The notes under the pieces are model-generated. The model saw only the letters and a program-made list of their open reading frames with translations, did not search any database and was not told where the DNA came from. Position numbers and translations under genes: made by a program. From Stylophora pistillata (taxonomy: Eukaryota): DNA of 64,000 nucleotides. Location of the stretch: positions 825,675 to 889,674 of the forward strand of contig NW_019217799.1 in the NCBI RefSeq assembly GCF_002571385.2, given 5' to 3'. Positions 19,696 through 40,101 of the stretch are shown piece after piece; the first letter of the stretch is position 1, and each line of letters starts with the position of its first letter.

Positions 19696-22600
19696 CTAGA
19701 GTTCGAAAATTTTAGCTCAAGCTTCACTCAACAAGACACGACCGTTCGTGGGAACTCTCGAAGTCCGGCAATTGCGTCAAACCACAAACAGTAGCCTTAC
19801 AATCACGTCTGAATGCTTGGGAGGATTCTCACCCAAGGAGCATGTGTTGAAATGTCTTACGACTTCGCCATGAAGGTCGTTGTCCGGTTTTCCGAATAAG
19901 TTACAGCGTTCGACTTCGCTTTTAATGCAACAACCAACCACAACCACGCCCGCACACTGAACAAACCATGCGCGACACGACCGCTGGGAACGAAATATCC
20001 CGGATTTACAGCCGAGGGCTGCAATCTGCCTGATCCCATATCGAAGCATCTCAAGTTTTCCATTACTTAGCCTTATCCATGCGCCTAGGATTCACGTTTT
20101 ATCTCAAGTTTCATTGTTTCAAAATCAATTTTAATTTTTATCTGACGAGGTTTCGTTCAAAGGACAACCGGCAATGGATTTAAATACAGCGTCGAAAAAA
20201 AGAAAACAAAAAACAAAAACAAAAAAAAAAAGAAAGGTCACGTGATCGAAATATTTGATTCACCAGGTCATCAGAAACCGACATCAGTAAGGCGCTTGTA
20301 TGTAATATTAACTTTGAAATCAAAGACAAAATAATTATACAAAACTCGCGCGATCATGTTTTCAGTGGCAAAGGTACACTAATCTCAGATAGTTATTCTT
20401 TTCAGTAAGGAAAGTATGAAATGCGGATTAGCGGCATCTTTCTGGGCCAGAGATTGATCAAAAAATGTTCAGTTTTACCACATCTATAGTCAGACGAATA
20501 CATTATGAAGTTCGAGAATGCAGGAGCTAAATCACAAGCGACAGAAGTGTACACGCTTGTGTTAAAGTAAGCCTATTTTTAAACAGTTAAGTGCCTTATG
20601 GCTTGTTTAGAGATCTCCGGTCTGATGTGAGCTATCGGGAGCCATCAACAACCTCACCACGTTTGGCAAATCAAAAGAATTATCGAAAGGCTCTCAAGTG
20701 AATTTTTAGACCATCAGATATTCCCGGCCATTAAAATGCTAAAAAAATTCTTGAACCGTAGTAGAGAAAGTGAATGGCAGTTCACATCAGATGTATGGTA
20801 ATTTTTTTAACTATTTCGCATTTCGTGCGTCATCAAATGAACCCGCAGCGTTTTAATACTTTCGAACTGGACATTTGACTGAACTGCGCATGAATTTTGC
20901 AGGTTTCATTTATAACAGTCACGAATTAAAATCTACTTCCTTTCGAAAGCGTGTTTTTAAGCCATAGAATAAACACTAAAAAGCATCTGTTTACTTAGTG
21001 AGAATTTTTACGACCTATTGATATTATAAAAACTATACATAGCTCATTGCTAATATAACCAAGTACTGGAGCTCTAAGCTTGATATCAAACTTGCAAACT
21101 TAAAGTGATGTTAAGCTAATCAATGCTAAAATGTCTTTTTCTAGAATAACGTTGGTAAAATAATGTCTAAAATTTGTAAATAATCCCGCAATTTGCTTAC
21201 TTTTGTTTTCGGACAATAAACGCGAATTCACAAAGTTTTCCTGTTGAATTGCATTCGTTTTTTAGTAAAAATTGTTTTCTCAAGGACTGGTATCTTAGAA
21301 ACACGAACATACTTTCCATTTAAGAGACACAGCCAATCAAATTATTTTATTGTTCTTTACTTGGTTCCAACATATTTCGTTCTTTGAAATAGTTTTGACT
21401 TATTAACTATGTAATTTATTGTGACAACAATTTTTGGATGAGAACAATGGGTATTTTTTGTCTGAATAAACACAATGCAAGAATATCAACATAACATTTC
21501 TGTGTCGTTTAGGTGACTAGAAAAACCCCAAATGATTTGGATATTATGCAATAGCATATTTGTTGTCAAAATCAAGCACAGCACTCCTTCACTCCTTATT
21601 TTTGACTCTCCTTTGCCTTAAATTTAGTTTAATTATCTTTGAGTTTTCACCATGCACGGAAACTTCTTGAATTAAGCGGGAGTTTTTCACAGATGAATCG
21701 AAGAGAAAATCATAAAGTATTCTGGACTTGGTCCCTGAATATGAATGAATTAATTCAGAAAAATCAACCTCCACGGTGTGAAGCTGTCCTGAGCCGTATC
21801 GATCCCTAATTGATTGAGGCTACTAGCTTATCTAAAACTCAGAAAGAAAAACTCGATCGACCGCTCAAAGGAATGTTGCGCATAAGAACTTAAATGGAAA
21901 ATTACCATTCGGAATTGCTGCGTGTTACCATGGAGACTACTCGGGGAATATAAATAAGGAAAACTGAAACTGCTAGAAATCATTACACGTCCTTCGTTTT
22001 ATTTAGATGTTTGACGAATTTTAACACGTATTTGCAGACGTAATATACATAGTTATTAGTTGGTTTTGCTTAAAAATTTGACAGTGGCCTAGCCTTTCAC
22101 TGCATGTGCTAAGGTGATTGGTTATTTCTCGCAAAAACGTGACTGACTGCAACTGGTAAATTTAACGACAGTTCGTTAACTGACCGTTATAAAAATCGTT
22201 GCTTAACCCATTGAAAACCAAAACTAACAACAAACTCCTTAATTTCAGGTTCAAAGAGCGCCATTTTCGAAGGGAATAATCCGTTTATATCATAAAGGTA
22301 CATGATAGCTTTTATGATATTAGGGAATTCCGTTTGTCTTGGAGTGGAATAGCTCAGTTAAAGCCTTACGTCACACTAAATAAAGACTAAGAACAGCTGC
22401 AACCATAGGGGACAAACCGAATCCAATTATTTAACATATTTTATTAGTTCCAGTTCAGTGAGAGCTGTACGTCTGGCGTATACCATTTTACATACTCCTA
22501 AATTCTGTTTTAATCATAGTATAAGTCAATACGCAATTTTTCTTCCGTGCACACTTCTAGTAAGAAGTATTGATTAATGGTCAAGAGGTCCGCTCATTTC

Positions 22601-23562
22601 GCTATAATATTAGAACAAGAAGAGGATAGATATCACTTGGCAATATTCAAACTTACTATTCATTTATTTTTTTCGCGTATTTTAAATACATTTGAATTTC
22701 TTTCACTTAAAAAGATTGAATTTTCTACTCGACCCCATCTTAGCTTTAAGGGAGAATATGAATTCAGAAGGGAACAGGAAGCAACAATCTTTTCAGTATA
22801 AAGATGGTTTTAATTTTCGATGATCACAAAGAATCTTTGCACTCATCAATGAAACATCTCACCTAGACTACCACGAAAGACTAAGATCTTGACGTTTTTT
22901 AATAAGAGTGATGTTGACAACGATGATTAAAATACCCAGCTCTCCTGACAGCATAGGTTAGCGGTTAATACGACTGGTACGTGCGTAATGTCGTATAAAT
23001 CAATATTTATATTTTTATTGCTGTTTGGTGTTATTTATAAAACTTAGAGTGTCATTTGCATAAATAGATGTGCAGCAGTATTTTTCATTGTGGCGGAAAT
23101 CTACTTAATACGATAAACTTCTTTAAGTCGACTGCTTCGCACATTTCCTGTATATTATGAAGCAAAATGCCAAGAATTTTAAGTATTTCCAAGAGCGCTT
23201 ATTTGTGAACTAGCTCTCCATCACTGTTATGCAACCCAGTCATGACTCACAATTAGATACTGATTTTTCCAACTGATGCGATATTTAGGATATTGACTTG
23301 GCACTGAAGGAAGGGTTACAAAATTGTTGTTGTAATGCAGAAAACATTGAAAATATTGTTTTGTCAGATAAGAAAATCTCCAACAGGAGGCACCTTTTAA
23401 ACAATTCAAGAAAACAATGAGTAAAATGTACAAATCTCATTTTCACTCCGTTACGGAGCTTATTAAGCGGTTATCAAATATCTTGATGATTTAAGTCGAC
23501 ATTTTATGTATTATGATTGATTTCTTTGAGTATGATGATATTAAAACTCCCCGTGTTGATCC

Positions 23563-23670
23563 CATGAGTGACTCATGATGACGTCAGTTGGTTCTCACAT
23601 GACACCCATACACGTCGAATTCTGATTGGTCAGTCTAGGTCTCCTGGGATGAGGCTTGTAAGGGCGGGGG
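23563..23670. promoter_or_regulatory. Cluster of Pol II cis-elements (AP-1, CRE, CCAAT, GC box)
   Basis: TGACTCA 23569-23575 inside the palindrome CATGAGT-G-ACTCATG; TGACGTCA 23579-23586; ATTGG 23625-23629; GGGCGGGGG 23662-23670. Confidence 0.4.
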
Positions 23671-25363
23671 AGACGGGAGAGGGGTTGGTCTGGTTTTATT
23701 GAAGTCCCCAGTTGCTTCAGCTAAAATCAGGCACTATTAGACAAAATGTATAAATTTAATTCGGATTTTTCGCAAAAACCTTTCACGCAATCGGTGAATT
23801 CTTGCTGTCAATTCAGTCCTTGAATGAAACAAATACGTGCATACTTTCTTGACGTAATTGGATGAACGATCACACAAAACCAAAGATAGTTTATTTGGCA
23901 CAATGATCTTTACACACGAACCGGATTTGCCTAGCTTTAGATTCATCCTTTTTAAAAATCTAATGAAAAATATTGGCGGACACAGAATTACGTGAACAAA
24001 ATAAAGAAAAAATGACCTCAAAGATAAAACCGTAATGGCTTTAGCGGTTGACATATTTTAGTGCCCCATCGCAGTGTGCGAGATAGTAACTTACTGTCGT
24101 GAACCATCACGCAAGCCGGCTACTCAACCCCGATGAAAAATTTCAGAACATCGAAACTGAAAGAAACAAAGGCGAAGGACGGTAATGTCTCAAGATCAAA
24201 ACGGGTTGATAAATTAAATTGAGCATTAGAATAATCCACTGCAAAGGTATTGATATTAAAGACAGTAATGGCGAATTGAAAGCTAAATATAGCTAAGTTC
24301 CTAACTGGCTTAGAACAATATAATGTTGGCAATGAAAAAGAAAAGATTTAGATCGAAGTAATTGTCTAGACATAAAAGCTTTGACTTGCGTTGTCAAAAG
24401 AAAAAAATTTGGCCCTGATTCAGAAGGATAGCGAACATCTTTAATAATTTCATTATTGTACTGCACGGAAAAAAGGTAATTTTGTGACAGTTTCATTCAT
24501 GAATAGGATATCCAAGAACTTAATCCATCCTGAGACAAGATTAAGCTTTTACCATACGGCAACTTAACGAAAAAAGAAAACAATTGTAGTTACAAACCAG
24601 AGACTCATTTTAATTTAGCCCGTGAACTTAGTGCTGCTTTTGAGGAAGAAATAAATCCTTATCGTTGCTAATTTCTGACAGGCCTCAGTAAATTATGGAT
24701 GACTCGCCAAGAAAGACAGTGGAAAGACAGCTACCTTTTACACTAATGATTAAAAAGGTAGGCCTGACTAATTATTTCCTCAAATAATCAGCACTAAAAG
24801 TACTTCAAATGTCACCGAAAGTGAATATATACAGCAAACAAACTGACAAGGGCAGATGTAAAATCCCTCAAAGGAAACAGTAAAATGCCACATGCAGGGA
24901 GAATGACAGCCGAACGAACGGATCATCTTGCACCACGGTAGATACAATTACCATTCGCAACTGAAAATCACGAGACACAGCTGAAAATCTTCGTAAAAAC
25001 TTTCAGGGTTTCAACAAAAATGCTGATAAATTTGCGGCGAAAAACTAAGAATTTAAAAACCAGCAGTGGTAATTTTTCATGTTCTGAATGAAAAACTAAT
25101 AACGTTTCTTTGTTGCCGTATTTCATGAAAAACAGAAACGCGACGCTAAAACCACGCGGAGAGAATTATCACAAAATTTAAGAAATCCCCTTTGGCTTCT
25201 TTTCATTGTGTTAGGTTTACAAATTGGATTGGTCACTGATGCATGACAGATTCTAAATCATGTACACGCCCCACAGCGTCCAGGCAAATATATAATAAAA
25301 CATCGTTCCTGAAAGCCTCAGACATTTTAAGATCCTCCATGACTTTTTGTTCTCTCTTGAATT

Positions 25364-28300
25364 TCACTGGCAAGATTCCTCGAGAAGAGCACTGTGAGAC
25401 CTCTTCTTCATTCGCACGAGCTTAGTCAAAGCTGCATTCCAAGGAGTGGTTGGCAGTTTAATCCGATCAGACAAATGTATCTGTGACAAGCTTTTCCTCA
25501 GAAATGTCAGAATTTCGCGATATCGAGACTGCGTTCTGCGAAGACACATCTGAAAGGCGTACAAACAAAGCCACGTGACTTCGTGCTCGTCCAATGAGAA
25601 CGCACTTTCATTTGGAGACAGCTGGAGGCACTTACGAGCACTGGTTGAGTAGAAATACTGCGCCAAATCCAGAATCATTCGGGCAAAAAAAGATGGGTTA
25701 TCCTTTGGTTTGCTACCTGTAACAATAGAACGGAACTAAAATGCCGAACTGACTCAACTTATATTTATGGATACCTTATGGAAACCCCTTTTACCACATA
25801 CTACACTTATTAGAGACTCAAGATGAAATTTTAAATGCTCTTTAGTTACACCTATCGGGCTAAATAATCGCGAAGAATCAAAGAATTATCTCCTCCACCT
25901 TTTCAACAACATTGTATTTCCACGCATCAAGTTTTCTTTTTTGAAAGAACGAGTTTTCATTACAAACGGAAATTAAAGTGCATTAGAAAAGAAACGTCAA
26001 CTTTGTTTGAACTAGATGAATTTAATCAAATATAACGAGGTCGCCATATCTCTAATAAACAGTCCTTGATTAGAAAAATCTGAAACTGGCCGTACAAAAA
26101 TAGACACCTCGGAACACAGGCAGCCCAAGCTCACTACTAGAAAAGCGGACGTAACTCTTAACGTGTTGCGCAACGTTTTATATTTAGAAAGGTTTGTATG
26201 GGATGTTATCGGTTTGCCTTAAAAGAGAGAAAAAAATGTCTTGTTTTGAAACAAAATGGGCTTACCTTATTGCTTTGTTGTTTTCTTTGTTTATTCCGAG
26301 CGTCTCAGGCCATTTTGAAGCGTTTTCGGCGAGTTAGCGCTATGTTGGTGTTCAACTGCTAACTTCTTTCTTTTAGCACTTGAACACCAACATAGCGCTA
26401 ACCCGCCGAAAACGCTTCAAAATGGCCTGAGACGCTCGGAATCAACAAAGAAAACAACAAAGCAATAAGGTAGGCCCATTTTATTTCAAAACAAGACATT
26501 TTTTTCTCTCTTTTAAGGCAAACCGATAACATCCCATACAAACCTTTATAAATATAAAACGTTGCGCAACACGGTAAGATTCACGTCCGCTTTTCTTGTA
26601 GTGAGCTTGGGCTGCCTGTGCCCGGAATTTTAATCACTGCACTATTTATAGTTTAAAATTTTGAGGGGAAGTACCCCAAAGTGAACATCGGAAATATTAT
26701 AAGGTCAAATATCCCGACATCAATTTTCTAAACTTTTTATTTAAAGAAACAATAAGAATGAGTTCCTTGCTTCCCTGCTTTAAGCTGTGAAAACAACTTA
26801 AACCTGAAAACGGAAACGTACTCACATAATTGACCATAAGGGAGATATTTGTCCGGTCAAGGAACCACAAGAATAGGTTTCTGTCTTGTCTTATTACCGT
26901 GAGTGAAAGCCATTCACAATTAAGATCAGACCCAATATCTGAAGGGTACTAAAGCCTCTGAGATCTCGCTCATCGTAATGTTGGTAACCATATAGAGTTC
27001 CGGAAGCTGTTACTTTGACGTTCGTTATCGCTTTAGAAAGAAATTTGCGTCAAAGAACTCTTGAATAATATTTTGTCTTTCTGTGCCCAGCCGCATAAAT
27101 ACAAATTTGTTTTTATCACCCATATGCTGTTTCTCAAGTTTCTCTCTCGATTTAAAAGCCATTGTGGATAATTAATAGAACGTCTTTTGTGACAAATATT
27201 CAACGAACATTCAGTTTATGCGACCGCAATTCTACCAAAACACAGGGAACACTTTTTCTTTTAAAATCCATTCTTTGGCGAAGGTACTTTTAATAACCGC
27301 TTGAAAAAAAATCGACATAGTGTTCGTATCTGCAAAACCCACTTTATTCTCGGCAACCTCAGGCATACTGTTACAACACTTCCAAATAATTCAGTTTAAT
27401 TTATGACGAATATCTCACGGATGCAAGTCACCAGAGGGCCGTCTTCACTTCCCAACAGGAAAATGGAAAACAAACACATGGTCGAATCGACAGAGGGAAA
27501 TTCGAACATTTTCTTTCACAAAAAAGATAAACGTAGAAAGATAATTTTTCCGAACATCAAGCAAAATGTTTCATAATTATTCACCAACTGCTGATGGGTT
27601 GGTGTAACTCATTTTGTCCAGACAAAGAGGCAAAAAAAAAAAGAAGGAAACTATAAACAATAGGATAAAACGCGAGAGAGTTTTTGCTCTTAAAACATAA
27701 TAACAACTTGCAGTTTTTCCAACCGTCCTTAAAAAAAAAGGAAAATTTCGCATCAATGGAGAAAACAGTTTTGGCAAATTAAGTGGGTTTGATTGATTTT
27801 AGATGTATAAGAACAGTGAAGCCATTAGCAACTTTTCAGTTGTCCATCATCAGTAAATGACGGTCTCAATTTTCTGTGATGGAAAATGCATCATCATCAA
27901 ACTCAACATCAACATCGGACTCAATGACTCAGCGCATCTGGTTCCTCCGTCAGTTTGATATCCGAGCAAGCCAAATGCTGGATACACAGCCAAGTTAACT
28001 TCAACTTGCAGACAGATTTCTGGGAGCTGCGTTTTTTTTTTTTTTCTAACTTCTAAATTGGAAGGCAGTCATGTTTATGTCACGGGTTTTAAGCTAACGC
28101 CTGCAATCTAACTAACGCATTTTAATCGGGGACGAATTGAATTCGAGATATCAGGCTACAAAAGAGGATAAGCTCCACATAAGGACTTCCTCTTCACGTT
28201 ATTGAGGCAATATACATTTACTGTCAAGGACACAGGTGTCGATAATAATAATCACATCTCAAAATTGAATCAATTGATTTACAAAGTGCAATCAAATCAA

Positions 28301-31300
28301 TATTTAGAATATTGTGACAATCTGCAAGAAAAAACGAACTTTCCATTGGTGAAAGAAGTGTACTTTTTCACACCTAATCCCCATAAAATTTTCATTCTCG
28401 ACGGTCCTAACGTTATAATACACGGTGTCTAGACAACACCCCTCTAACAACAACGAGAGTACATTGAATTTACTCGCGTCGTTATTGCAAAGAAATGATT
28501 ATTGCTGCCTGAAAATCGAATTTAATTTTAATTTTGTTCCTATTTAATCACTCTGTGAAAGCAACCCATCTCTTTATTTGTATAACAGCCTGAGGTAATA
28601 TTCGAGTATTGATCGTCAAAATTTTCCGGAGACCTGCTTTGTTCACTCAAAGTCAGAATTGTGCGCCAAATTAAGTCCCACTTACCTCTGTGGTCCATTT
28701 AGAATTTTCTTTCCCGCAAATACCAATAACAATTAAAAACATATTTCCTGCCTACCTTTCATTTACAACATCCTTTTGAAAGAAAACTAGTTTAATTAAT
28801 TGCGCTTGTTGCTTGATGGCATCTGCAACTGCAGAGAATTCAGGCCCCGCAAAACGAAAGATTACAGAAGTCATGACTATTTCACTCTCAAGGTCTCAAA
28901 ATATTTTCTCCTCGCTGTCTAACAAACATTTCATATAATTGTAGCTCTGTGAATTTAGTTTTCAATCAAGTGATATCAAAAAATTGATCTGTTTGTTTCT
29001 TCGCGTCACCTTATTGCTCGACATTGCGTTAATAAAGCTACGAGAAATTATTTATTGATCAGTCCTTGGAATGAAAGGAATAAGGTTTCCCCAAACAGTA
29101 CCCCGAAGAAAAAAAGGTTTTATTAGCTAAATTAAAGGCGACAAAATCTTTTCTCCGAAACCAATCAGCGCGCGTTCTACGATTCGTTAAAATTTTCTGA
29201 AAATAAAAAGGCTAAGAATTCACCTCGTGGTAGCTCTTTGACGTAAGTGTGGAACTTGTACGCTGTTAACAGGAACACATGGAACACGTTCAACAGGGTG
29301 TTCTCGCGCGTGTTCATATTTGGGTCCAGGAGCAATGGATGGCACTTTGGGCGTACGGAGTACCGGAGCTTCTTACTAAGGGCTTCACCAGGATGTGCAT
29401 CCAGGGACACAGTCAACGAGTCCCTTAAGAGGGACCCTAGGAAAGCAAGTTGCAGTTTAGTGCAGTAAATATGTTTACCCGCCACACTCAATAAATTTTT
29501 GCCTTTTTCAATTTTCAGTTTAACTTCGTTCCTCGGCTTTCAAACTTTTTTTTTCAAGTGTTGTATTTTCCTGTCTTTGTTGTTAAAGCTCATTTTGATT
29601 ACAAGCTAAGAGGTTATTAGGGTAAATAAACAGCTGGTACTGTCGGAGCAAGGTGTTCTGTCGCACTTTTTAATACTACGAATCGCCTCACTTTGTTATA
29701 AAAAAAATGTCGCAGTTTGTAATAAAAAGGCTGTCGCGCTTTTTAATATCACACCATCGCAGTTTCTGATAAGTTAAGCTGTCGCACTTTGTAATAAACT
29801 TGATATAGATGGTCGGAGGGCGAGTAGATCCAATAATAAACATCATCCTTGTCACTGACCAGACAATTATTATGACAATAACGATAATCAAAGTAATAAT
29901 AATAATAATAATAATTACAATTATGATAATGATTGAGATGGTAACAGCAGAACTCGAAATTAACGCTCGCAAACTCGCAAAGTGCGAGTGACTTTGAGAA
30001 TCTGCGAATGAGAAAAAGATCCACTAGCAAATGTTTGCGATTAGATAGGCGGTAGCTGTCAGGACAACGAGATAGGAGACCAAATACTTCATACCTTTTT
30101 TTATTAAACTTTTCAGCTCATTGAAAGACTGTGCGAAATATGAATCATAATCTTTATATCAGATATGGTCATTGAAATTTCTAATTTAAGAATTTGCTAG
30201 TGCTCTCACCAGTTTGCCAATGGAAAAAAAATCTGACTCGCAAAATTTTGTAGGTGGACCAACAAGTTAGCTTCGAGCCCTGAACAGTGACAGTGATAGA
30301 GATATTGACGAGAACCAAAATGTGTATGATACATTGTCCGGTTTTGCTTAGCGTTCGCCAAAACCATAACATATTAAGCTCAAAATAACACTTTGACAAA
30401 ACAAATAGAGAAGCCTTGACTGTACTCTGTTCTCTTGTAAAGCACTTTGGGAGCGGCTAGAGCACTCGAGAAGTGGGGAGAAATACTCCACTACGTCTCT
30501 TGTTTCTCCCTATGCTCGGTTTACAACAGAACAGACCACAGTCAAGGCTTCTCTCTTTGTTAAATCAACTTCACTTCACATAAAGGAAAAGGGATTAAGA
30601 GAACAATGAATCTTCCACTAAAACTTACCTGTATACCGGGACAAGTCCGGTGAAACTTCAAGTGTGACTGTATCCAAAAGAAAGCCGCACCAAGGAAAAC
30701 GATCGCTCACTCCAATCCTTGTCACCTTGTGGCCATCAGCTGTGACTGCAGTATAGTTGGTCAGCGTTTTGTCATGATTAATGACACACCCATACTCAGG
30801 AATACCAGCACGCATTGTATTCAGGAACTTGTCAGCCAGCCGACGGTGTGGAGTGACAAACAGAAAGTCGTCCACCCATCTTAGCAGGAGGGAGTCTGTA
30901 TCCTGGGCTATTTCAGACAGGTGGGTCCTCTCCATCTGACTATAATAGTAACCGCAAAGCATTGTGGATAGGATGGAACCTTGTGCGATTCCTACATGAA
31001 GGAGAAAATCATATAAGGTAAGAATTCAAAGTGATGCTGGTAACATTTACGGAGAAGCGAATGGTTTTGAGACCTTTTGCTGTTTGTTACCAAATCAATA
31101 GGGCTGCATGATTTCCGCGCATCTTACGTGACCTGGCTTACAGCATTGCTCTACCTCTTAACAAGAAAAGTATCTAACAAAGAGAGGGGGGTTCATGGGC
31201 ATCTTGGACCTTCCAGGGCCCTCTCCCTTCCTCCGCCCTGATCAGAGGCACTGAGAGTAAAGAACCTTGGTCAAGAACACAACACATTCGTGAATGACCC

Positions 31301-34300
31301 GGCCACCGCTCGGACATGGTTGCCTCGCTGATTTGGATCTCAGCGGGCGAACCATTAAGCCACTGCGCCTGCGCCAGCTAACTATTATGTGTTCTGTTGC
31401 ACTATGTAATACTTTATAATGACAGTTGACAAAAATAGCTGTCGCATCTTGCGGTAATTTCAGACCATCGCACTTCATAATTGTAAGCTGTCGTGCCTTG
31501 TAATAACAGTTGTCGCTCTTTGTAATATTTTTGTTTTCTGTTATTGCATAGAACGACAGCTTTTTCGGAGTGCGACAATTTTACCACAAAGTGCGAAAGG
31601 TATTACAAAGTGTGACGATTGTTGCAAAATGCGACAGAACATGATGATGACCGTTTTTTAACTCGAAGGCGCTGATACCCAAACACAATACAGTGACCTC
31701 AACACTTGTGCACGTGGGCACACTGTTCCCTTCTTGGATAATCTCACAGTCATTCTTAATTCTAGGGTTCCTAAAAAAGATATTATTAGATCAGAAGATT
31801 ACCCCCGCATAATTCACCTACCCCCCTCTGCTGGTAATATTTGTTACCCCCGCATAATTCACCTACCCCTCTTCTGCTGGTAATATTTGTTACCCCCCGC
31901 ATAATTCACCTACCCCTCTTCTGCTGGTAATATTTGTTACCAATCTTGACGAAGTTATTAAATATATGTTCTTCCAATAATTTAATCAACTTGTCGCGGT
32001 CCTCTGTTGCATACCAAACGTTATCCACAACGACCACTTGCCTCAGTTTCCACTCGACCACAAGTGAGCGAAAGAAATCTGGGAACAGACGGCAATCATC
32101 TGCGGTACTGACGTCCTTAGAAAACTCTCTGCAATTTTAAAGACAGCAATTTTAAGCACATCGCTACTGGAGACTGTCTAATATTTATTTATTCTGAAAG
32201 TGAAAACGCGACTCCACGTTGTTCAGCAAGAAATACTAACGTTCCTATTAACCCTCTCCGCCCTAAAATCAGAATGCATATTCTCCACACAGTTCTCGAT
32301 ACATCTCCTAAAATGCTGAAAAGGAGAATTTGTAGAACAATCAAGAGCTTCTTTAGTTGGTGATCATCTCCTTTATTGTTAATGACCTTAATGTTTATTC
32401 AAATGTGATATTTTAAAGAAAAATTAGACTCTTGTGACCCTTAGGGGTCAGAGTTTGAGAGGATGCGCTTGGCTTCATGACTACCTTGAGGAACCAGGGT
32501 TTACCCCAAAGCGCGGCTTTACGGGGTTTCCGAACGATGAATTTGAATATATGAAAATCATATACGTGTACTCTTTATTCCGCGACCGAACACTGAGGCC
32601 CTAAAGAAAAGCTTTAGTTATAGGGGCGCAGTAACATGGAACAGCCTGTCAGCTGAGGCTTATATTAGCTGGCCACAACTTTGAAATGTTTTTATTCCGC
32701 TATTGTACATTAAGTTTCTTCTGTCTAGGATTTTATTATAGGTTAATACATTGTACATTAAGATTCTTCTATCTAAGTATTTATTATAGGTTAATTTTTA
32801 AGTCTTAGTTTAATGTGCACGGCTCTTTTGAAGACCACTTATTAGTGATAAGGATTCCGTGGCTAAATAAAGATTGATTGATTGATTGATTGATACTGCG
32901 GTTTCATAAAATGTATGAAAGCGTTCCGCGGAGTAATGAACCATACTTCTGTAGTAGTGGAAATAAGGCCTGAAAAAAAATCAGGATTTCCAAAGTTTGA
33001 AAACAAGCATAAAACTAATCTAAGCGTCAAACGGGGAGCAAATAATTGCGCCCAAGGATAAGTAGTATTGCAAGTTTCTGTTTTTCGAAATGAAGTACTC
33101 GAAAGCATAACTGACAACAAGATTGATGTAACAAGTCGTAGATAAAACTCACTTCGAACTTTATAACCTCTCACTGTTTCCATTGCCCATCTACTTTTCG
33201 TTTTCTCTTTGATTACATATGAATAAGTTCAAAAAACCTTTAAGGACACTCCATTCCATAGGCCTCCTTTCTTGAAAAAGGTCCCAAAAATTAATATAAA
33301 AAAGGGCCCTCTTTGCCAAATTCCTAGAATAAACCCTTAGGAACTCCGCAGGTTAAGAGCCGATCTTATCACTATCACATGCACTAAATCTCAAAGCTTT
33401 GTCGAGGTTTACTGTATGCGGTGTTGGGTGAACAATACATAATTTTAAACTAAAAAAAATAGATTCCAATCGTGCTTGTAAACAAACGACACTCACAAAG
33501 TATCTTTTTTTTTAAATCATTATAAGATTGTCTACGGTATTCACCGGTATCAGTTTATTCCTGGCCCCCTTAAAGCACTTATACATAAAGACAGCCAGGT
33601 GAAGAATTAGTCATAATCGATTGGGGTGGGGGGAAATTCGTGAAATGTGGATCTACACCTTCCTCACCTGTATACCTTTCCACCAGACATGCGCAACAAA
33701 GCAAACCGTCGAATGAGGTATTCCTCCTCCTCCAGCACTTCCTTCATGATGTCAAAAAGTTTCTGATGGAGGATAGACTCGTAGCAATGGCTTACGTCAA
33801 CGTGTACAAAGTACAGCGGTTTCCCCTCCAAACGAGTGCGTGAGCGAGTGGAAAACGGCTTTAGTGCCCGGTAAAGATCATCAGTCCCAAACAATGTAGT
33901 GCCCATCTTTTCTGGGTTGCGCTCTTTCTCGAACTTAACAACTTCAAACAAATTCTTCAGTTTTGAATTCACTGACAGCTCCTTGCTTGTAGGACAGTGA
34001 CGCATGTTGGTAATAGGGCGGACAGTTGACGTCTTCGGCAAAAACCTAAGCAGAGAGAACCCCAGTGAATTTTGCGCGCGAAGTAGGTTCTCTGCTGTTG
34101 CGGTTTTCAACGGCTTGAAGAATTCATCACAAAATGTACGAAGACTAAACTGTTGGATCGTTTCCCAGATAGGCTTTCTATAATAAAAAACCCTCTGACG
34201 GTGAATGCCAGTCTCTGTGATGTAGAAGAAGGTTTTCAGCACAGTCATAAGATAACTGTTCACCAACCACCACATGAACTGCGCTAAAAGTTCCAACTGC

Positions 34301-37280
34301 TTCACAGAGTCAGACAATGCAACGCGCTTTCCACTTCCGCTCTTCCTCAATTGAAGCCACTTGCAGCTAGAAACCTTGATTCCTGACATCATCTGAGCAA
34401 GAGAGAACTTTTCCGCTCGATAGAGGCGGATGAACTTCCCCAGATTTCGAAAGAATGTTTCTTTGTTTCCTGGAGACCCCCAAATTTCTTTTGGAACTAC
34501 TTTCTTACATATACCCTTCAGGAAGCCAACCACCTGAAACAAATAAATCATGAGATTCAGAGTTGGTCGTCGAGGAATGGAGATTTATCATTTTTCGAGC
34601 TAAGTTCTCACTGCATTATTATACACCGAGGGAAAAGTTTCTTAGCAAAGAAACTTTAGTAACATAACACGAAATTCCGTCGAGGCGTTTCTCTCAACGC
34701 AGTGGAATACTATCGGATAATTTTCGCGTCGTATTTAAGTCCCGACACGTTGCTCTTCCTGTCGAACCTATCAAATTTGAAAATTTATTCAAAACATTGC
34801 GAACATCCAGATATTTAAATGTCACAAAATTTCTGATACAGGGGGCTTGGCCGTGTCACAGTGGATGAAAGCTGCATTGACACATCATCTCGTGCGATAA
34901 AAGAATATTTATGAAATCTCTGCAGCAGATTTTGTCAAAATGATACCTCGCACGAATTCAAAACTGATTTGAATTCGTACCAACATTCTGTTGCATGGAC
35001 TAAGATTTTCACGAAATTCGTCTTTCCGCATGCAGCGATTTGTCGCCTGGACCTACACCCTCTCGTTACAGAGCAGTAAACACGGGGCGGATCTCTGCGC
35101 ACAACAGTCGCTGTGACTTGTCACCCATCGTGTCCTGCCTAATAACGTAAAGCAAGTTCAGACTTTCATAGTGTAAAATCTACCTGATGATGTTCTGTAA
35201 ACATACTAACAGCTCGACGATACCTCACTACGTCAACCTTTACTTTTCTCTGGGCGCGACGCTTCCTTTGAGTAGACTTCGCCCGACTCTTTAGACATAG
35301 CTTGTGATAAACCATCTTTACACCAAAAGGAATTCTTTCCAGCATCCTTTTCTTTTTTCCACTTTTGATCACCGGTCTTCCAAAATCGTAACGGCAATAC
35401 AGCTTTACCAAGGTTCTGAATGGACACTTGTGGTGCCTTGCCAGGAACTTGTGTAACATTGGCACTATAGTCTTCAGCCTCTTTGGCAGACGAAAAGGCT
35501 TCTGTTTCCTCCGTGGGGTAAGCTTCAGAGTATTAGACCCATCAGGTTTTTCAACAGCTGCCTGATTCACGATGTTGACATTTGGCTCTTTTCTTTCATC
35601 TTTCTTCATCCCTCCCCGATCGCCACAGGCGCCTAAAAACGTACCTTGCAGAAAAATATGTTGAGCCAGCTTGCGCGCTCCAGCCATACTCACAGGTAAT
35701 GACTCCACAATATGGTTCTTTGGGAACGTTTGGGAAAGATTCGAGGTATAAAACATTTTTGAGCGAGGTATTAACATCTCGTTCAAACAGATACTCTTTC
35801 TGTTTTTCTTCAAACTTGAGCTTCCTCTGCTGTCATCGATCTGCTGTTTACTTGCCTCTTTAAGCTGGCTGTTACTCTGAGCAGTCCCCTTTTGTTTTCC
35901 TTTCCCTGCAAGTTCACTTCGTCAAGTAGACTTGGGAAGAAACTTGATCAGATATTTCCACGGTTTACTTCCACCCGTCGCTTCATTCTTCTCGTTCTCG
36001 ACCCTCACTGCAATAGAAACAGATTTCTTTCTTTTCAAAGTTTGAACATGTGTTTGTTCCTCAACACCGACAGGCTGTGGGAAAACCAGACCACCCTGAT
36101 ACTTCAATCTCGGCTCCTTTGGTTGTTCTCGAGAGGTTTTGCTGATAACGCTACCCTGAGTTTCAGATGAATCTACAAGGTCAGTGGTATTTGACATTAC
36201 TACATCGGAAAATTCTTTCCCAACTTTAGCCTGATCTGCATCAGCAACTGTAACAGCTGTCGCACTCTCCAAGAATGACTTTGCTGTAATTTCAACATTG
36301 ATCAGACCGTCTTCCGACAACAAGGGCGAGGTACTTTTGAGGACGTTAGAATTTGTGCTTGACTGCTTTTTAGATGGATTTGGATTATCTCTTGAAACAT
36401 CATCGCTGTCCAAACTGTCACGCTTTCGTTTTCCACTGCTCTGGGGTACTTCAGCGAGATGAGTAACAACACTGCTACTGTTTGCGTTCATTTGGACAGG
36501 AGCTCTTGAGAATACAGGCGGGTGATCCGTAGTTGAAATTGCATCAGCTAATTCAGAGCAGTTTACTTTGGCTCTGACATTTTCACGATATCTCCGAGCT
36601 CGCTTGCCACCTCTTCTCGATTTTCGATTTAATATCGCATTCAAAGTACCTCTATCTTCTACTGTTTCTTCTGCTTTTTTTACGGGAAGTGGAGTGAACA
36701 CATCTGCTGATGTCATTCTACTCAATCGCGTTATGGGATAACCAGCGACTTGGAAATAACACGAGTTCACCTTGGCAAATATGGACAAATTTTGTAACAA
36801 ATGGATCATCAAGTCGTCTCCTATACGCTCGTGAAGCAGCTTCCAGGCTCTCGCTGTTCGCAAATAACTTACAACAGTGTTGGGATAGCTGTTCTGGATT
36901 CCAACCGTCCCAGCCACTATTCCCTTCTTTCCATATCCAGTCAACGACTCAAAGCCGTATGCTAAAACATTTGTCTTGTTCCCACGGCAAAAGTGTTCAA
37001 TAACTCTAACAGTTATTTCCTTAAGGGTAAACCATTGTGTTTTACTTGGCTTAAATGGCGGCGTGACTGGCTGATCCCGCGGAACCGCGATCAAAGTCGT
37101 TTTCAGAAGAAGTCGATACTCGTCAGGATCGCCATCTTGGATGAGCTTGAGAGCTTTATCTTGTTGGACCTCACGTATATAGCGAATCAACACAAAATGC
37201 TTAGCGTAAAACGATCCAATAATCTGTGGGATTTTGCAAATTTGGATTTTATTCCTCTTCTTTGCCTGTTTGGTCGCCAT
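25364..37280 (-). CDS. TERT: Telomerase reverse transcriptase (6 exons; in-frame TGA at 35924-35922 in exon 1)
   Basis: Exons 37280-35184, 34533-33668, 32128-31914, 30991-30629, 29436-29224 and 25716-25364 are phase-consistent GT-AG (4107 nt). TEN/GQ: NVLAYGF, WKLLHERIGDDLMIHLL, YFQVAG. CP: RHHKCPF. QFP: QVVGFL..VVPKEIWG. T motif: FFYITE. RT motifs: 1 LRFLPK, 2 RPI, A FVHVDVSHCYESI, B' QKRGIAQGSILS, C LRWVDDFL, D GIPEYG..INHDKT, E FPWCG, followed by the CTE. Confidence 0.96.
26115..26620. mobile_element. Foldback non-autonomous DNA transposon (P-element-like ends) in TERT last intron
   Basis: Near-perfect inverted arms of about 245 bp, starting CACAGGCAGCCC and ending GGGCTGCCTGTG, with a loop of about 10 nt. 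Flanks CTCGGAA / CCCGGAA form a 7-bp TSD with one mismatch. CANRG termini with 7-8 bp TSDs are typical of the P superfamily. Confidence 0.85.
30401..30560. mobile_element. Palindromic MITE in TERT intron 4
   Basis: Inverted ends ACAAATAGAGAAGCCTTGACTGT / ACAGTCAAGGCTTCTCTCTTTGT. Confidence 0.7.
31390..31641. mobile_element. MITE with internal TGTCGCAC-type short repeats
   Basis: Inverted ends TGTTCTGTTGCA / TGCGACAGAACA. A related partial copy lies at about 29653-29800. Confidence 0.55.
31799..31941. repeat. G-rich (sense strand) minisatellite, 3 x 45-47 bp, spanning the TERT exon 3 donor
   Basis: Plus-strand units TTACCCCC(C)GCATAATTCACCTACCCC(TCT/CC)TCTGCTGGTAATATTTG at 31799-31843, 31844-31889 and 31890-31936. 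Confidence 0.95.
32571..32893 (+). mobile_element. 5'-truncated CR1/L2-group LINE 3' end nested in a SINE, antisense in TERT intron 2
   Basis: Translates to LFIPRPNTEALKKSFSYRGAVTWNSLSAE (typical ORF2 C-terminus). The 3'UTR has a 48-bp tandem duplication, AATAAA and an (ATTG)n tail. It interrupts the host repeat ATATGAAAATCATATACGTGTA|CTGCGG. Confidence 0.7.
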
Positions 37281-37443
37281 CACATATGCATGAGGCTTCA
37301 CTTTTCCCGCCGCGATAATATATTCTTCTACTGGAACCGCTGACTACATTGTATGCTGTAATATGCCGTGACTCGTCAGTGCTCGACCCGTGACCAGTCC
37401 TCACCAGTCGCCTGTCAGTGAAATATTTATTGAAGCAATCAAA
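37281..37443. promoter_or_regulatory. Putative bidirectional promoter between TERT and MANBA
   Basis: 163 bp between divergent ATGs (37280 on -, 37444 on +), CpG-rich. E2F consensus TTTCCCGC at 37303-37310; partial ACTACA motif at 37343-37348. Confidence 0.65.
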
Positions 37444-40101
37444 ATGGCGATCATAGTCAAAGGAAAAGTGATCGTATTTAGAATAACAATAATGCTCTAT
37501 AATGTCATCCTGATACATTGTGGCATTGTAGAAGTCAATCTCGGAGGCACCTGGATTGTTTCGAATGCAAATAACAGTATTTCTGTGCCCGGAATTGTTC
37601 CCGGAAATGTTCACACAGCTTTGTACAGGAATGGACAAATTTCGGATCCGTACTTCCGGTTTAATGATGTTAAGTATCGCTGGATAGCGTATGATAATTG
37701 GACGTACACAAGGTCGTTGGAAGGTTTGAATAAAGTTCTTTTCTTTCATTTTATTTGACTTACCGGTACTTGTCGTTGTGAATGTCGTTAACATTGCTAA
37801 ACACAGAGAACTTATCTGTCAAAATTTGAGCACCAGCAGACCTTTCGACTGGCTCTTGTATATACCCCGGGGAATGTTGCTTCAGCTTAGAGTAGTAAAC
37901 AGTCCGTAATAGTCGTATGCTTTCGACTTTGTAGCCATAATACACCGAATTAAACTCAATGCCAAAGATTTCAAAATTCAAGTTCTTGAGATGTTTGATT
38001 TTGAATCACCTTTCCCCCCCCTTCCCCCCCTCTTTCATCTAACTATGATCCTAGCCTCTTGTGGCACAAAGTCAGGGGTGTTTCCTAAATGGACCCCATC
38101 CATCCAAAATCTTAGATATTACAAAAACATTGCTGCGTTTGAATAATAATCCAGCAGCTATTCCTGAATGTTTTGTTTCTAGATTTCACTTTTTTTTTAA
38201 ATTTCACCAAATTTGTTTTTTAGAGATTTGTTTTAGAGCTAGATTTAGTAATCTTTTCAGAAGACTAGGGACCTTAGGAGGGTAGTGGCCTATCTGGTCA
38301 GGGCTTGCCCCATCAGAAGTGACCAAGTGTACATGCTAGTCCAATCCTGGTTCTACCAGTTTTTTTTTCAAGTTTGACAGTCCCCAAGTATCCATTTGTA
38401 CTCCAGGATGGACAGTCCCTTTGAAAGTTAAGTGTCTTGCCCATTAATACAAAGACATGACCCATCTAGGGGCTTGAACTAGGATAGGTGGTTTAGTAAA
38501 TGTGAAATTGCTTATATGTGTTCTTTTGTAAAAAGTAAAACCTTCAGTTGGTAAATCAGCTGGATTTTCTATCCTTTTTTCCTTTTTGTACTTAAAATTT
38601 ATAGTTTAAAGCAAGCATGTACACCAAGCTTTTTCAATTCAGATTAAAACTTTGTTAAATGTTTCTTGCTCCTCAGTCAAGATAGATTTTGAAAATTCTT
38701 AAAAGTGCATTTTCAAAATTGGCACATATTGGATTTGGGAGACCATGAAATGTGCTGTTGCAAAGAATTTATTGTATTAAAAATTCTTCGTACAAAATAG
38801 ATTGGCTGTTTACTTTAACGTATTCTTAACCTTTCATGCAATGTGTTCTTATCTTCCTATGATGATCTTTTTGCTCCCAGTTTCTGAAGATGTCACATCA
38901 AAAGGGAACATTCTGTTGGTTTTCGAGGGCCTGGACACAGTTGCTGCAGTTCTGGTTAATAATATTGAAGTTGGCCACTCAACAAACATGTTCCACAGAT
39001 ACATCTTCAATATTAAGGAGGCTCTAAAAACTGGTTTGAACAAGATTGAAGTGCGCTTCACTTCTGCAGTGCTCTATGCTAAAGGGCAAGCCAAAGTGTA
39101 TCCATATCGTGTACCCCCTGAATGTCCAGTCCCAGTTCAGCGTGGTGAGTGCCATGGAAACTTTATCAGAAAAGAACAGTGTTCATTTAGTTGGGTAAGC
39201 CATTGTTATAAGTCAAGTTATCAATAGATTTTATTTTCATCATAACATAGCCAATACATTTATGATATTAAGTAATTATGAAATACAAATAATCTATTTT
39301 AAGGACTCAGTCAGTGCAGTGATTCTCCAAAGTTTGGGTGTGCTTTATATCTCAATGAAAGTATGCTGGCTTATGAAGCAGCTTTTAATTATTATGGGAG
39401 TTCCAATCTAGTTACCATAATCTTAAAACCTCAAAAACTGAGTCACCTTTGAATTTGTGCACATTAATGACTCTGATAATGACAAAGATATCAGAAGTTT
39501 TGGATTGAACATTTGAATTGCAATTGGCTGTAAAGGGATGTATGTTAGACTTGACTTGGGTACCTGGTGAACTCCTACTGTCCTGCATGTGTTATTGAAA
39601 TCAACTATGATTTGCTCCTGTTCCTTTTTTAGGACTGGGGACCAGCCTTTGTTCCTCAAGGGATTTGGTGATTTTTTTTTTCTTCTATTTAAAATTAAGA
39701 TATGTGAATAACTTAGTTGGTAGTTCTTTTCTTTGCAAGGGGGTAAGGGAATACCATGCAGCAATGATGAGATTGATGATCCTTTTTTTAGAAGTTAAAA
39801 TTGCCAAATTACCAAGGAGTTACAGAGAGAAAAAAACTAAACAGTCAGATTCAATTCTCAATCTTACACCCCTTAACCTGTCAACTCCCAAGATCTAATT
39901 GTTAATTCTCCCCTCTTGTTGCTACACATTTCCTTGTAAATCAGTTATGAAAGTTTGGTATTAAATCAGGATAACAACTTTTTTTATCCAACTTTGCTTC
40001 GTAGAGTACAAATAACGCACGAGACAAGTACAAATATCACGTGATATTTGTACTCCAGAAATATCCGCGAAATTTGCCTGCACTGAAATAACAATTTGGC
40101 A

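What the first reader, a model, noticed from the sequence alone, without database searches (positions are those of the whole stretch)
35775..35968. In-frame TGA splits TERT exactly in the TEN-TRBD linker: recoding, exitron or two-piece telomerase
Seen: the ORF-track entries 35922-37301 and 35166-35813 are one reading frame broken by a single TGA (35924-35922): ...PKST*RSELAGKGKQK...SLKKNRKSICLNEMLIPRSKMFY. The rest of the 4.1-kb CDS has no other lesion. (a) The context is UGA-C (ACU UGA CGA), the leakiest known stop class, so readthrough or selenocysteine is possible. (b) A frame-preserving 63-nt GT-AG segment (35968-35906; GAA|GTAAAC...CTTGAC...TTGCAG|GG) contains the stop, so splicing versus retention could be an on/off switch. 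(c) Unspliced, the mRNA encodes a 452-aa TEN+linker protein, and the next in-frame ATG (35777) lies just before the TFLY-like motif, giving a complete TRBD-RT-CTE ring; isolated TEN is known to complement a TEN-less human TERT in trans. (d) A nonsense allele (e.g. CGA>TGA) or a consensus error. Options a-c are inference and would be a new mode of telomerase control.
Basis: partly seen in the sequence, partly recalled or inferred. Interest (0 to 1): 0.85.

Follow-up and report, generated by a model that had tools for sequence, protein, structure and literature searches.

The report
Private stop codon in coral TERT
The stop codon that splits the coral telomerase gene exists only in this reference assembly: other colonies and the nearest related coral carry an ordinary Gly or Arg codon there, and the mRNA is not spliced around it, so it is a private nonsense allele or a base error, not a new way of controlling telomerase.

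Summary
On the minus strand, one TGA (35924-35922) interrupts the 2,057-nt first coding exon of a TERT gene. It lies in the TEN-TRBD linker, about 45 codons before the TFLY-like motif.

On the coding strand, an RNA run reads AGA (Arg) at that base. Another RNA run and a DNA run read GGA (Gly). The closest orthologue, from a Tara metagenome, has GGG (Gly). Thirty-eight of 42 coral homologues are 578-782-aa reading frames, long enough to run through this region.

Spliced mRNA contigs from two studies run straight through the proposed 63-nt GT-AG segment. One of them removes the true 690-nt intron next door. Such GT-AG pairs surround almost every codon by chance, and the segment encodes the best conserved linker motif. 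No SECIS was found.

Verdict: this is an ordinary TERT gene. The TGA is private to the assembly, at a tri-allelic codon. It is either a real, probably heterozygous, null allele or a consensus error, and I could not separate these. The scan earlier noted private stops in other genes of this assembly.

The parts
35922..35924 (-). In-frame TGA, codon 453 of TERT. + strand base 35924 is A in the window, T in RNA run X8 (AGA, Arg), and C in RNA run X17 and DNA run X11 (GGA, Gly).
   Evidence: (table 3)
35224..37280 (-). TERT first coding exon (ATG at 37280): TEN domain, linker and start of TRBD. It ends in phase 2 at a GT donor.
   Evidence: (joint)
35906..35968 (-). Proposed 63-nt GT-AG exitron. 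It is not spliced in mRNA contigs. It encodes the conserved linker motif, and its acceptor AG is absent at the aligned position in the closest orthologue.
   Evidence: (tables 5, 8)
35931..35966 (-). Linker motif KPWKYLIKFLPK, the most conserved stretch of the linker in 23 coral orthologue reading frames. It ends two codons before the TGA.
35775..35777 (-). Next in-frame ATG, just before the TFLY-like motif (RSKMFYTS). There is no evidence that it is used as a start.
34534..35223 (-). True intron, 690 nt, GT..AG, removed in the same X8 contig that runs through the 63-nt segment and the codon-453 site.
   Evidence: (table 5)
33668..34533 (-). Next TERT exon: Telomerase_RBD (E 7.7e-40) and the start of RT.

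Best explanation
This is an ordinary single-copy TERT gene of a reef coral; earlier scan notes name the genome Stylophora pistillata. In the species, codon 453 of its large first coding exon is a sense codon (GGA Gly or AGA Arg), and the exon is translated as one continuous TEN-linker-TRBD frame.

The TGA is a single-base state private to this reference assembly, at a weakly constrained, tri-allelic codon. It is one of two things. It may be a genuine allele of the sequenced colony, most likely heterozygous; that would be a null allele exposed to nonsense-mediated decay, because the stop lies far upstream of many exon junctions. Or it may be a base error of the consensus. My odds within this explanation are roughly even. 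Neither case involves recoding, regulated splicing or a split enzyme.

Shown: sense codons in other samples and in the orthologue, collinear mRNA, and a single genomic copy. Inferred: heterozygosity and NMD.
For: -, table 3: at + strand 35924, run X8 (polyA RNA, same species label) reads T, i.e. AGA, at depth 13 of 13. X17 (RNA) and X11 (DNA) read C, i.e. GGA. All three readings lie more than 120 nt from a contig end.
-, tables 5 and 8: X8 record 20 runs collinear over 35222-36254 and, in the same contig, skips 34532-35221. It is therefore mature mRNA that keeps the 63-nt segment.
- X16 record 8 runs from 35925 through the proposed donor. Another X16 contig ends, with unmatched letters beyond it, at the 33668 exon boundary, so X16 is also spliced RNA.
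- the closest orthologue (P0001, locus L002) reads ...KFLPKSS-G-RSE..., with GGG at the aligned codon.
- 38 of 42 coral homologues are 578-782-aa reading frames, long enough to run through the region.
- the assembly holds only one copy.
- no SECIS at E up to 1 over 22500-37800.
- 19 of 26 coding variants are non-synonymous, so the linker is weakly constrained.
Against: Whether the A at 35924 has read support, and at what fraction, is therefore unknown. Contigs drop minor variants, so a rare spliced isoform or a rare TGA allele in the other samples cannot be excluded. X17 also covers intron sequence, so it says nothing about splicing. X17 and X11 are labelled as metagenomes; they are more than 99% identical to the window but may come from sibling lineages.
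Confidence: 0.9

Rival explanations
1. Programmed stop-codon readthrough or selenocysteine insertion at UGA-C yields full-length TERT from the TGA allele as a regulated step.
For: The stop is UGA followed by C. From my own knowledge, this is a relatively leaky context. There is only one lesion in the gene.
Against: The stop is not conserved: three other samples have AGA or GGA, and the orthologues have Gly, Glu or no residue there, never Cys. No SECIS-like RNA was found in 22500-37800 at E up to 1. The downstream context is CGA AGU, not the CUAG known for efficient readthrough (own knowledge).
Confidence: 0.02
2. The 63-nt GT-AG segment is an exitron, and its splicing removes the stop as an on/off switch.
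For: A frame-preserving GTAAAC...TTGCAG segment encloses the stop.
Against: Mature mRNA contigs of two studies (X8 and X16) are collinear through the donor, and X8 through the whole segment. No such joint was reported in any of the four runs laid. Such GT..AG pairs occur around virtually every codon. The segment encodes the best conserved linker motif. The acceptor AG is replaced by AA at the aligned position in the nearest orthologue.
Confidence: 0.02
3. Two-piece telomerase: a 452-aa TEN+linker protein and a TRBD-RT-CTE ring started at ATG 35777 assemble in trans.
For: The stop and the next ATG bracket the domain boundary. From my own knowledge, trans-complementation by an isolated TEN domain has been reported for human TERT.
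Against: The split is absent from the other individuals and from all 42 coral homologues examined. Reinitiation after a 452-codon ORF is inefficient in eukaryotes (own knowledge). No transcript start was seen inside the exon (table 6: none).
Confidence: 0.01

Closest known systems
Canonical metazoan TERT gene, in which one large 5' exon carries the end of TEN, the linker and the start of TRBD (as in human TERT exon 2; own knowledge)
   Same: The domain order TEN, linker, TFLY-like motif, TRBD, RT, CTE was confirmed by Pfam. The long, poorly conserved linker lies in one large exon, and the frame is continuous in the orthologues.
   Different: This assembly carries a single TGA at codon 453. The corals share a linker motif, KPWxYLxKFLPK, just before it.
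Heterozygous TERT loss-of-function alleles, as in human telomere biology disorders (own knowledge)
   Same: If the base is real, it is a premature stop in TERT that truncates the protein before TRBD and RT. It would be carried next to a normal allele.
   Different: No read-level proof of the allele, no phenotype, and no frequency data are available here.
Exitrons and small cnidarian introns
   Same: GT-AG ends, and a length that is a multiple of three, inside a coding exon.
   Different: No junction was seen in RNA contigs, the content is conserved as coding sequence, the acceptor is not conserved, and the pattern is expected by chance.

Membership tests
TERT (telomerase reverse transcriptase) | TEN domain at the N terminus | tested here: met
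   PF11474 TEN_TERT, E 9.2e-10, 39.4 bits against a cutoff of 25
TERT (telomerase reverse transcriptase) | Telomerase RNA-binding domain | tested here: met
   PF12009, E 7.7e-40, in exon 34533-33668
TERT (telomerase reverse transcriptase) | Reverse transcriptase motifs | tested here: inconclusive
   RVT_1 gave only 16-19 bits on single exons, below the cutoff of 29.6.
TERT (telomerase reverse transcriptase) | C-terminal extension | tested here: met
   PF21399 TERT_C, E 9.2e-14, on the reading frame at 29491-29177, plus a weaker hit on the frame at 25678-25364
Selenoprotein gene | SECIS element in the 3' UTR | tested here: not met
   No SECIS family at E up to 1 in 22500-37800, both strands
Selenoprotein gene | UGA aligned with Cys or Sec in orthologues | tested here: not met
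   Orthologues have Gly, Glu or a gap. Conspecific samples have Arg or Gly.
Programmed stop-codon readthrough | Stop codon and its context conserved across individuals and species | tested here: not met
   Sense codon in 3 of 3 informative runs and in the orthologue
Exitron / alternatively retained intron | Splice junction seen in RNA | tested here: not met
   No joint at 35969>35905 in the four runs laid (three of them RNA). X8 mRNA is collinear across it while splicing the neighbouring intron. These are contigs only, so minor isoforms are not excluded.
Exitron / alternatively retained intron | Splice sites above chance and conserved | tested here: not met
   136 such segments enclose this codon, against a mean of 87 per codon. 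The acceptor AG is AA at the aligned position in L002.
Split (two-gene) telomerase | The split is present in relatives or in the population | tested here: not met
   38 of 42 coral homologues are 578-782-aa reading frames long enough to cross the site, and all 23 aligned cross it without a stop. Other samples have a sense codon.

The most novel reading that the evidence does not exclude
The TGA is a genuine allele segregating at a Gly/Arg/stop tri-allelic codon of coral TERT. Carriers, even homozygotes, would keep telomerase activity through UGA-C readthrough, or through a TEN fragment acting in trans on a ring started at ATG 35777.
Probability: 0.03. Interest if true: 0.7.

Novelty: not a real feature. 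Interest (0 to 1): 0.1.

Why it matters
It matters little for telomerase biology, because the species' TERT is a normal, continuous gene. The result has practical value. Gene models and comparative studies that use this reference should treat codon 453 as Gly or Arg, and should not report a truncated or split coral TERT. Together with earlier scan notes of private stops in other genes of the same assembly, it flags either a measurable load of heterozygous null alleles in the reference colony or a class of base errors in the assembly. Either would be worth one systematic read-level check.

Tried and rejected
- **Selenocysteine:** an Rfam scan at permissive E over the gene and its 3' flank found no SECIS, only three chance-level hits to unrelated families.
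- **Second copy or haplotig in the assembly:** none; the region matches only itself.
- **TGA allele in other public assemblies:** I looked by exact product, with the 452-aa N piece and the 203-aa ATG-35777 product. Neither is on record.
- **Exact DNA pattern around the site, with N at the variable base, in JGI metagenome contigs:** no match, with the same caveat.
- **Literature on coral TERT:** two papers hold the search terms; judging by their titles and abstracts, which is all I read, neither bears on this site.
rejected. The other alleles are GGA and AGA, and the variable base is not in a CpG.

Full report
**Observation.** Reading the minus strand confirms one open frame from 37301 to 35166 with a single stop, TGA at 35924-35922, in the context ACT TGA CGA. 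The first ATG is at 37280. The next in-frame ATG after the stop is at 35777, directly before a TFLY-like stretch (RSKMFYTS). From my memory of the human protein, the following residues resemble the human TERT TRBD entry. Pfam finds TEN_TERT in the 452-aa piece upstream of the stop (E 9.2e-10). It finds Telomerase_RBD (E 7.7e-40), weak RVT_1 and TERT_C in downstream exons. The window holds only A, C, G and T, with no N.

**What other samples show.** The look-up of sequencing runs identified the organism as a coral. Twenty runs from 9 studies hold the stretch. I laid four of them on 33400-37800:
- X8: polyA RNA with the same species label as the window.
- X16: spliced RNA, judged by a contig that ends with unmatched letters at exon boundary 33668 and by zero depth over the intron.
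- X17: RNA labelled as a coral metagenome.
- X11: DNA labelled as a metagenome.

At + strand 35924, where the window has A (the T of TGA), X8 reads T, which is AGA (Arg) on the coding strand. X17 and X11 read C, which is GGA (Gly). Each reading is from one contig, at full depth and far from a contig end. No run reads the window's base.

X16 does not cover the base, but its 621-nt contig starts exactly at 35925. The same geometry (a contig ending one base from the variant) occurs at the proven heterozygous sites 36255 in X8 and 36546 in X16. I infer that X16 is probably polymorphic at 35924 as well.

**Splicing.** X8 record 20 is one contig that lies on 35222-36254 and on 33668-34531. It skips 690 nt with GT..AG ends on the minus strand. 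After the tool's +2 shift, the exact boundaries are exon end 35224, intron 35223-34534 and next exon start 34533. The contig is therefore mature mRNA, and it runs collinear through the whole 63-nt segment 35968-35906. X16 record 8 also runs through the proposed donor. No joint at 35969>35905 was listed for any run. X17 also covers intron sequence (record 15), so it says nothing about splicing. Contigs cannot exclude a minor isoform.

**Chance.** 136 frame-preserving GT..AG segments of 30-300 nt enclose this codon. The exon-wide mean is 87 per codon, and 96% of codons have at least one such segment of 100 nt or less. The GT-AG pair therefore carries no information.

**Orthologues.** A search with the 452-aa N piece found 42 coral homologues, 38 of them reading frames of 578-782 aa, long enough to span TEN, linker and the start of TRBD. 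I aligned the two window pieces as separate rows with 23 of them. The closest, P0001 (73% identity, from a Tara metagenome scaffold, locus L002), has Gly exactly where the window has the stop. The next closest has Glu, and the others have a gap.

At the DNA level, L002 reads TCT AGT GGG CGA AGT where the window reads TCT ACT TGA CGA AGT. The window's acceptor CAG|GG is CAA GG in L002. The 63-nt segment encodes KPWKYLIKFLPK, the most conserved stretch of the linker in all 23 rows. Splicing it out would delete the only constrained part of the linker.

**Recoding.** Rfam at permissive thresholds found no SECIS over 22500-37800. Orthologues show no Cys at the site. The stop is not conserved in any comparison. 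These results fail every defining feature of a selenoprotein or of programmed readthrough.

**What it is.** The gene is single-copy in the 398-Mb assembly. The TGA is a state private to the assembly, at a codon that carries Gly or Arg elsewhere. The linker is weakly constrained within the species: 19 of 26 coding variants are non-synonymous.

**Real allele or consensus error?** I could not decide this.
- For a real allele: natural single-base differences are far more frequent than base errors in short-read assemblies (own knowledge). The site is demonstrably polymorphic, and a heterozygous TERT null is viable in other animals (own knowledge).
- For an error: 5 of about 33 variable sites are tri-allelic, where uniform mutation would give fewer than 0.5. 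At four of them the window base is private and a + strand purine, while the runs carry C or T.
- Also for an error: window-A sites that differ number 16, of which 12 are transversions. Window-T sites number 9, of which 3 are transversions. This strand asymmetry is unexpected for real substitutions.
- Earlier notes of this scan report private in-frame stops in other genes of the same assembly. These are untested leads.

My odds are roughly even between the two.

**Comparison with the known.** The gene is a canonical TERT by domain content. Nothing here differs in kind from an ordinary gene carrying a private nonsense variant or base error in a reference assembly.

**Limits.** The exact-product and exact-pattern look-ups for the TGA allele elsewhere were blank, but these collections may withhold records of this genome, so the blanks mean nothing.

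Noticed in passing
window 37305-37424 (with 37424-37723 + strand): TERT sits head to head with a + strand gene. That gene's first exon, 37424-37723, encodes a Glyco_hydro_2_N2 domain (E 1.4e-13). RNA contigs of TERT reach 37305-37317. The neighbour's X8 contig carries Illumina adapter letters just before 37424, which marks a transcript end. Only about 110 bp separate the two 5' ends, so this is a likely bidirectional promoter. A head-to-head gene with the same domain is present in the orthologue locus L002.
   Followed up: partly
window 35931-35966, minus strand: KPWxYLxKFLPK is a short, strongly conserved motif inside the otherwise fast-evolving TEN-TRBD linker, shared by 23 coral orthologue reading frames. 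Its function is unknown.
   Followed up: no
window 33843, 35374, 35924, 36121, 36211: Five tri-allelic sites occur among about 33 variable sites in four runs. At four of them the window's base is private and a + strand purine, while the runs have C or T. There is also a strand-asymmetric excess of window-private A. This points either to mutation hot spots or to a class of consensus errors in this assembly.
   Followed up: partly
window 37283: A 6-nt indel lies just 5' of the TERT start codon, in RNA run X8 and DNA run X11 relative to the window (table 4).
   Followed up: no
window 36048 and 35430: The reference haplotype carries further non-synonymous differences where the other samples match the orthologue. 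At 36048 the window has His and all four runs and the orthologue have Gln. At 35430 the window has His; three runs and the orthologue have Gln, and no difference from the window was listed for X16.
   Followed up: partly
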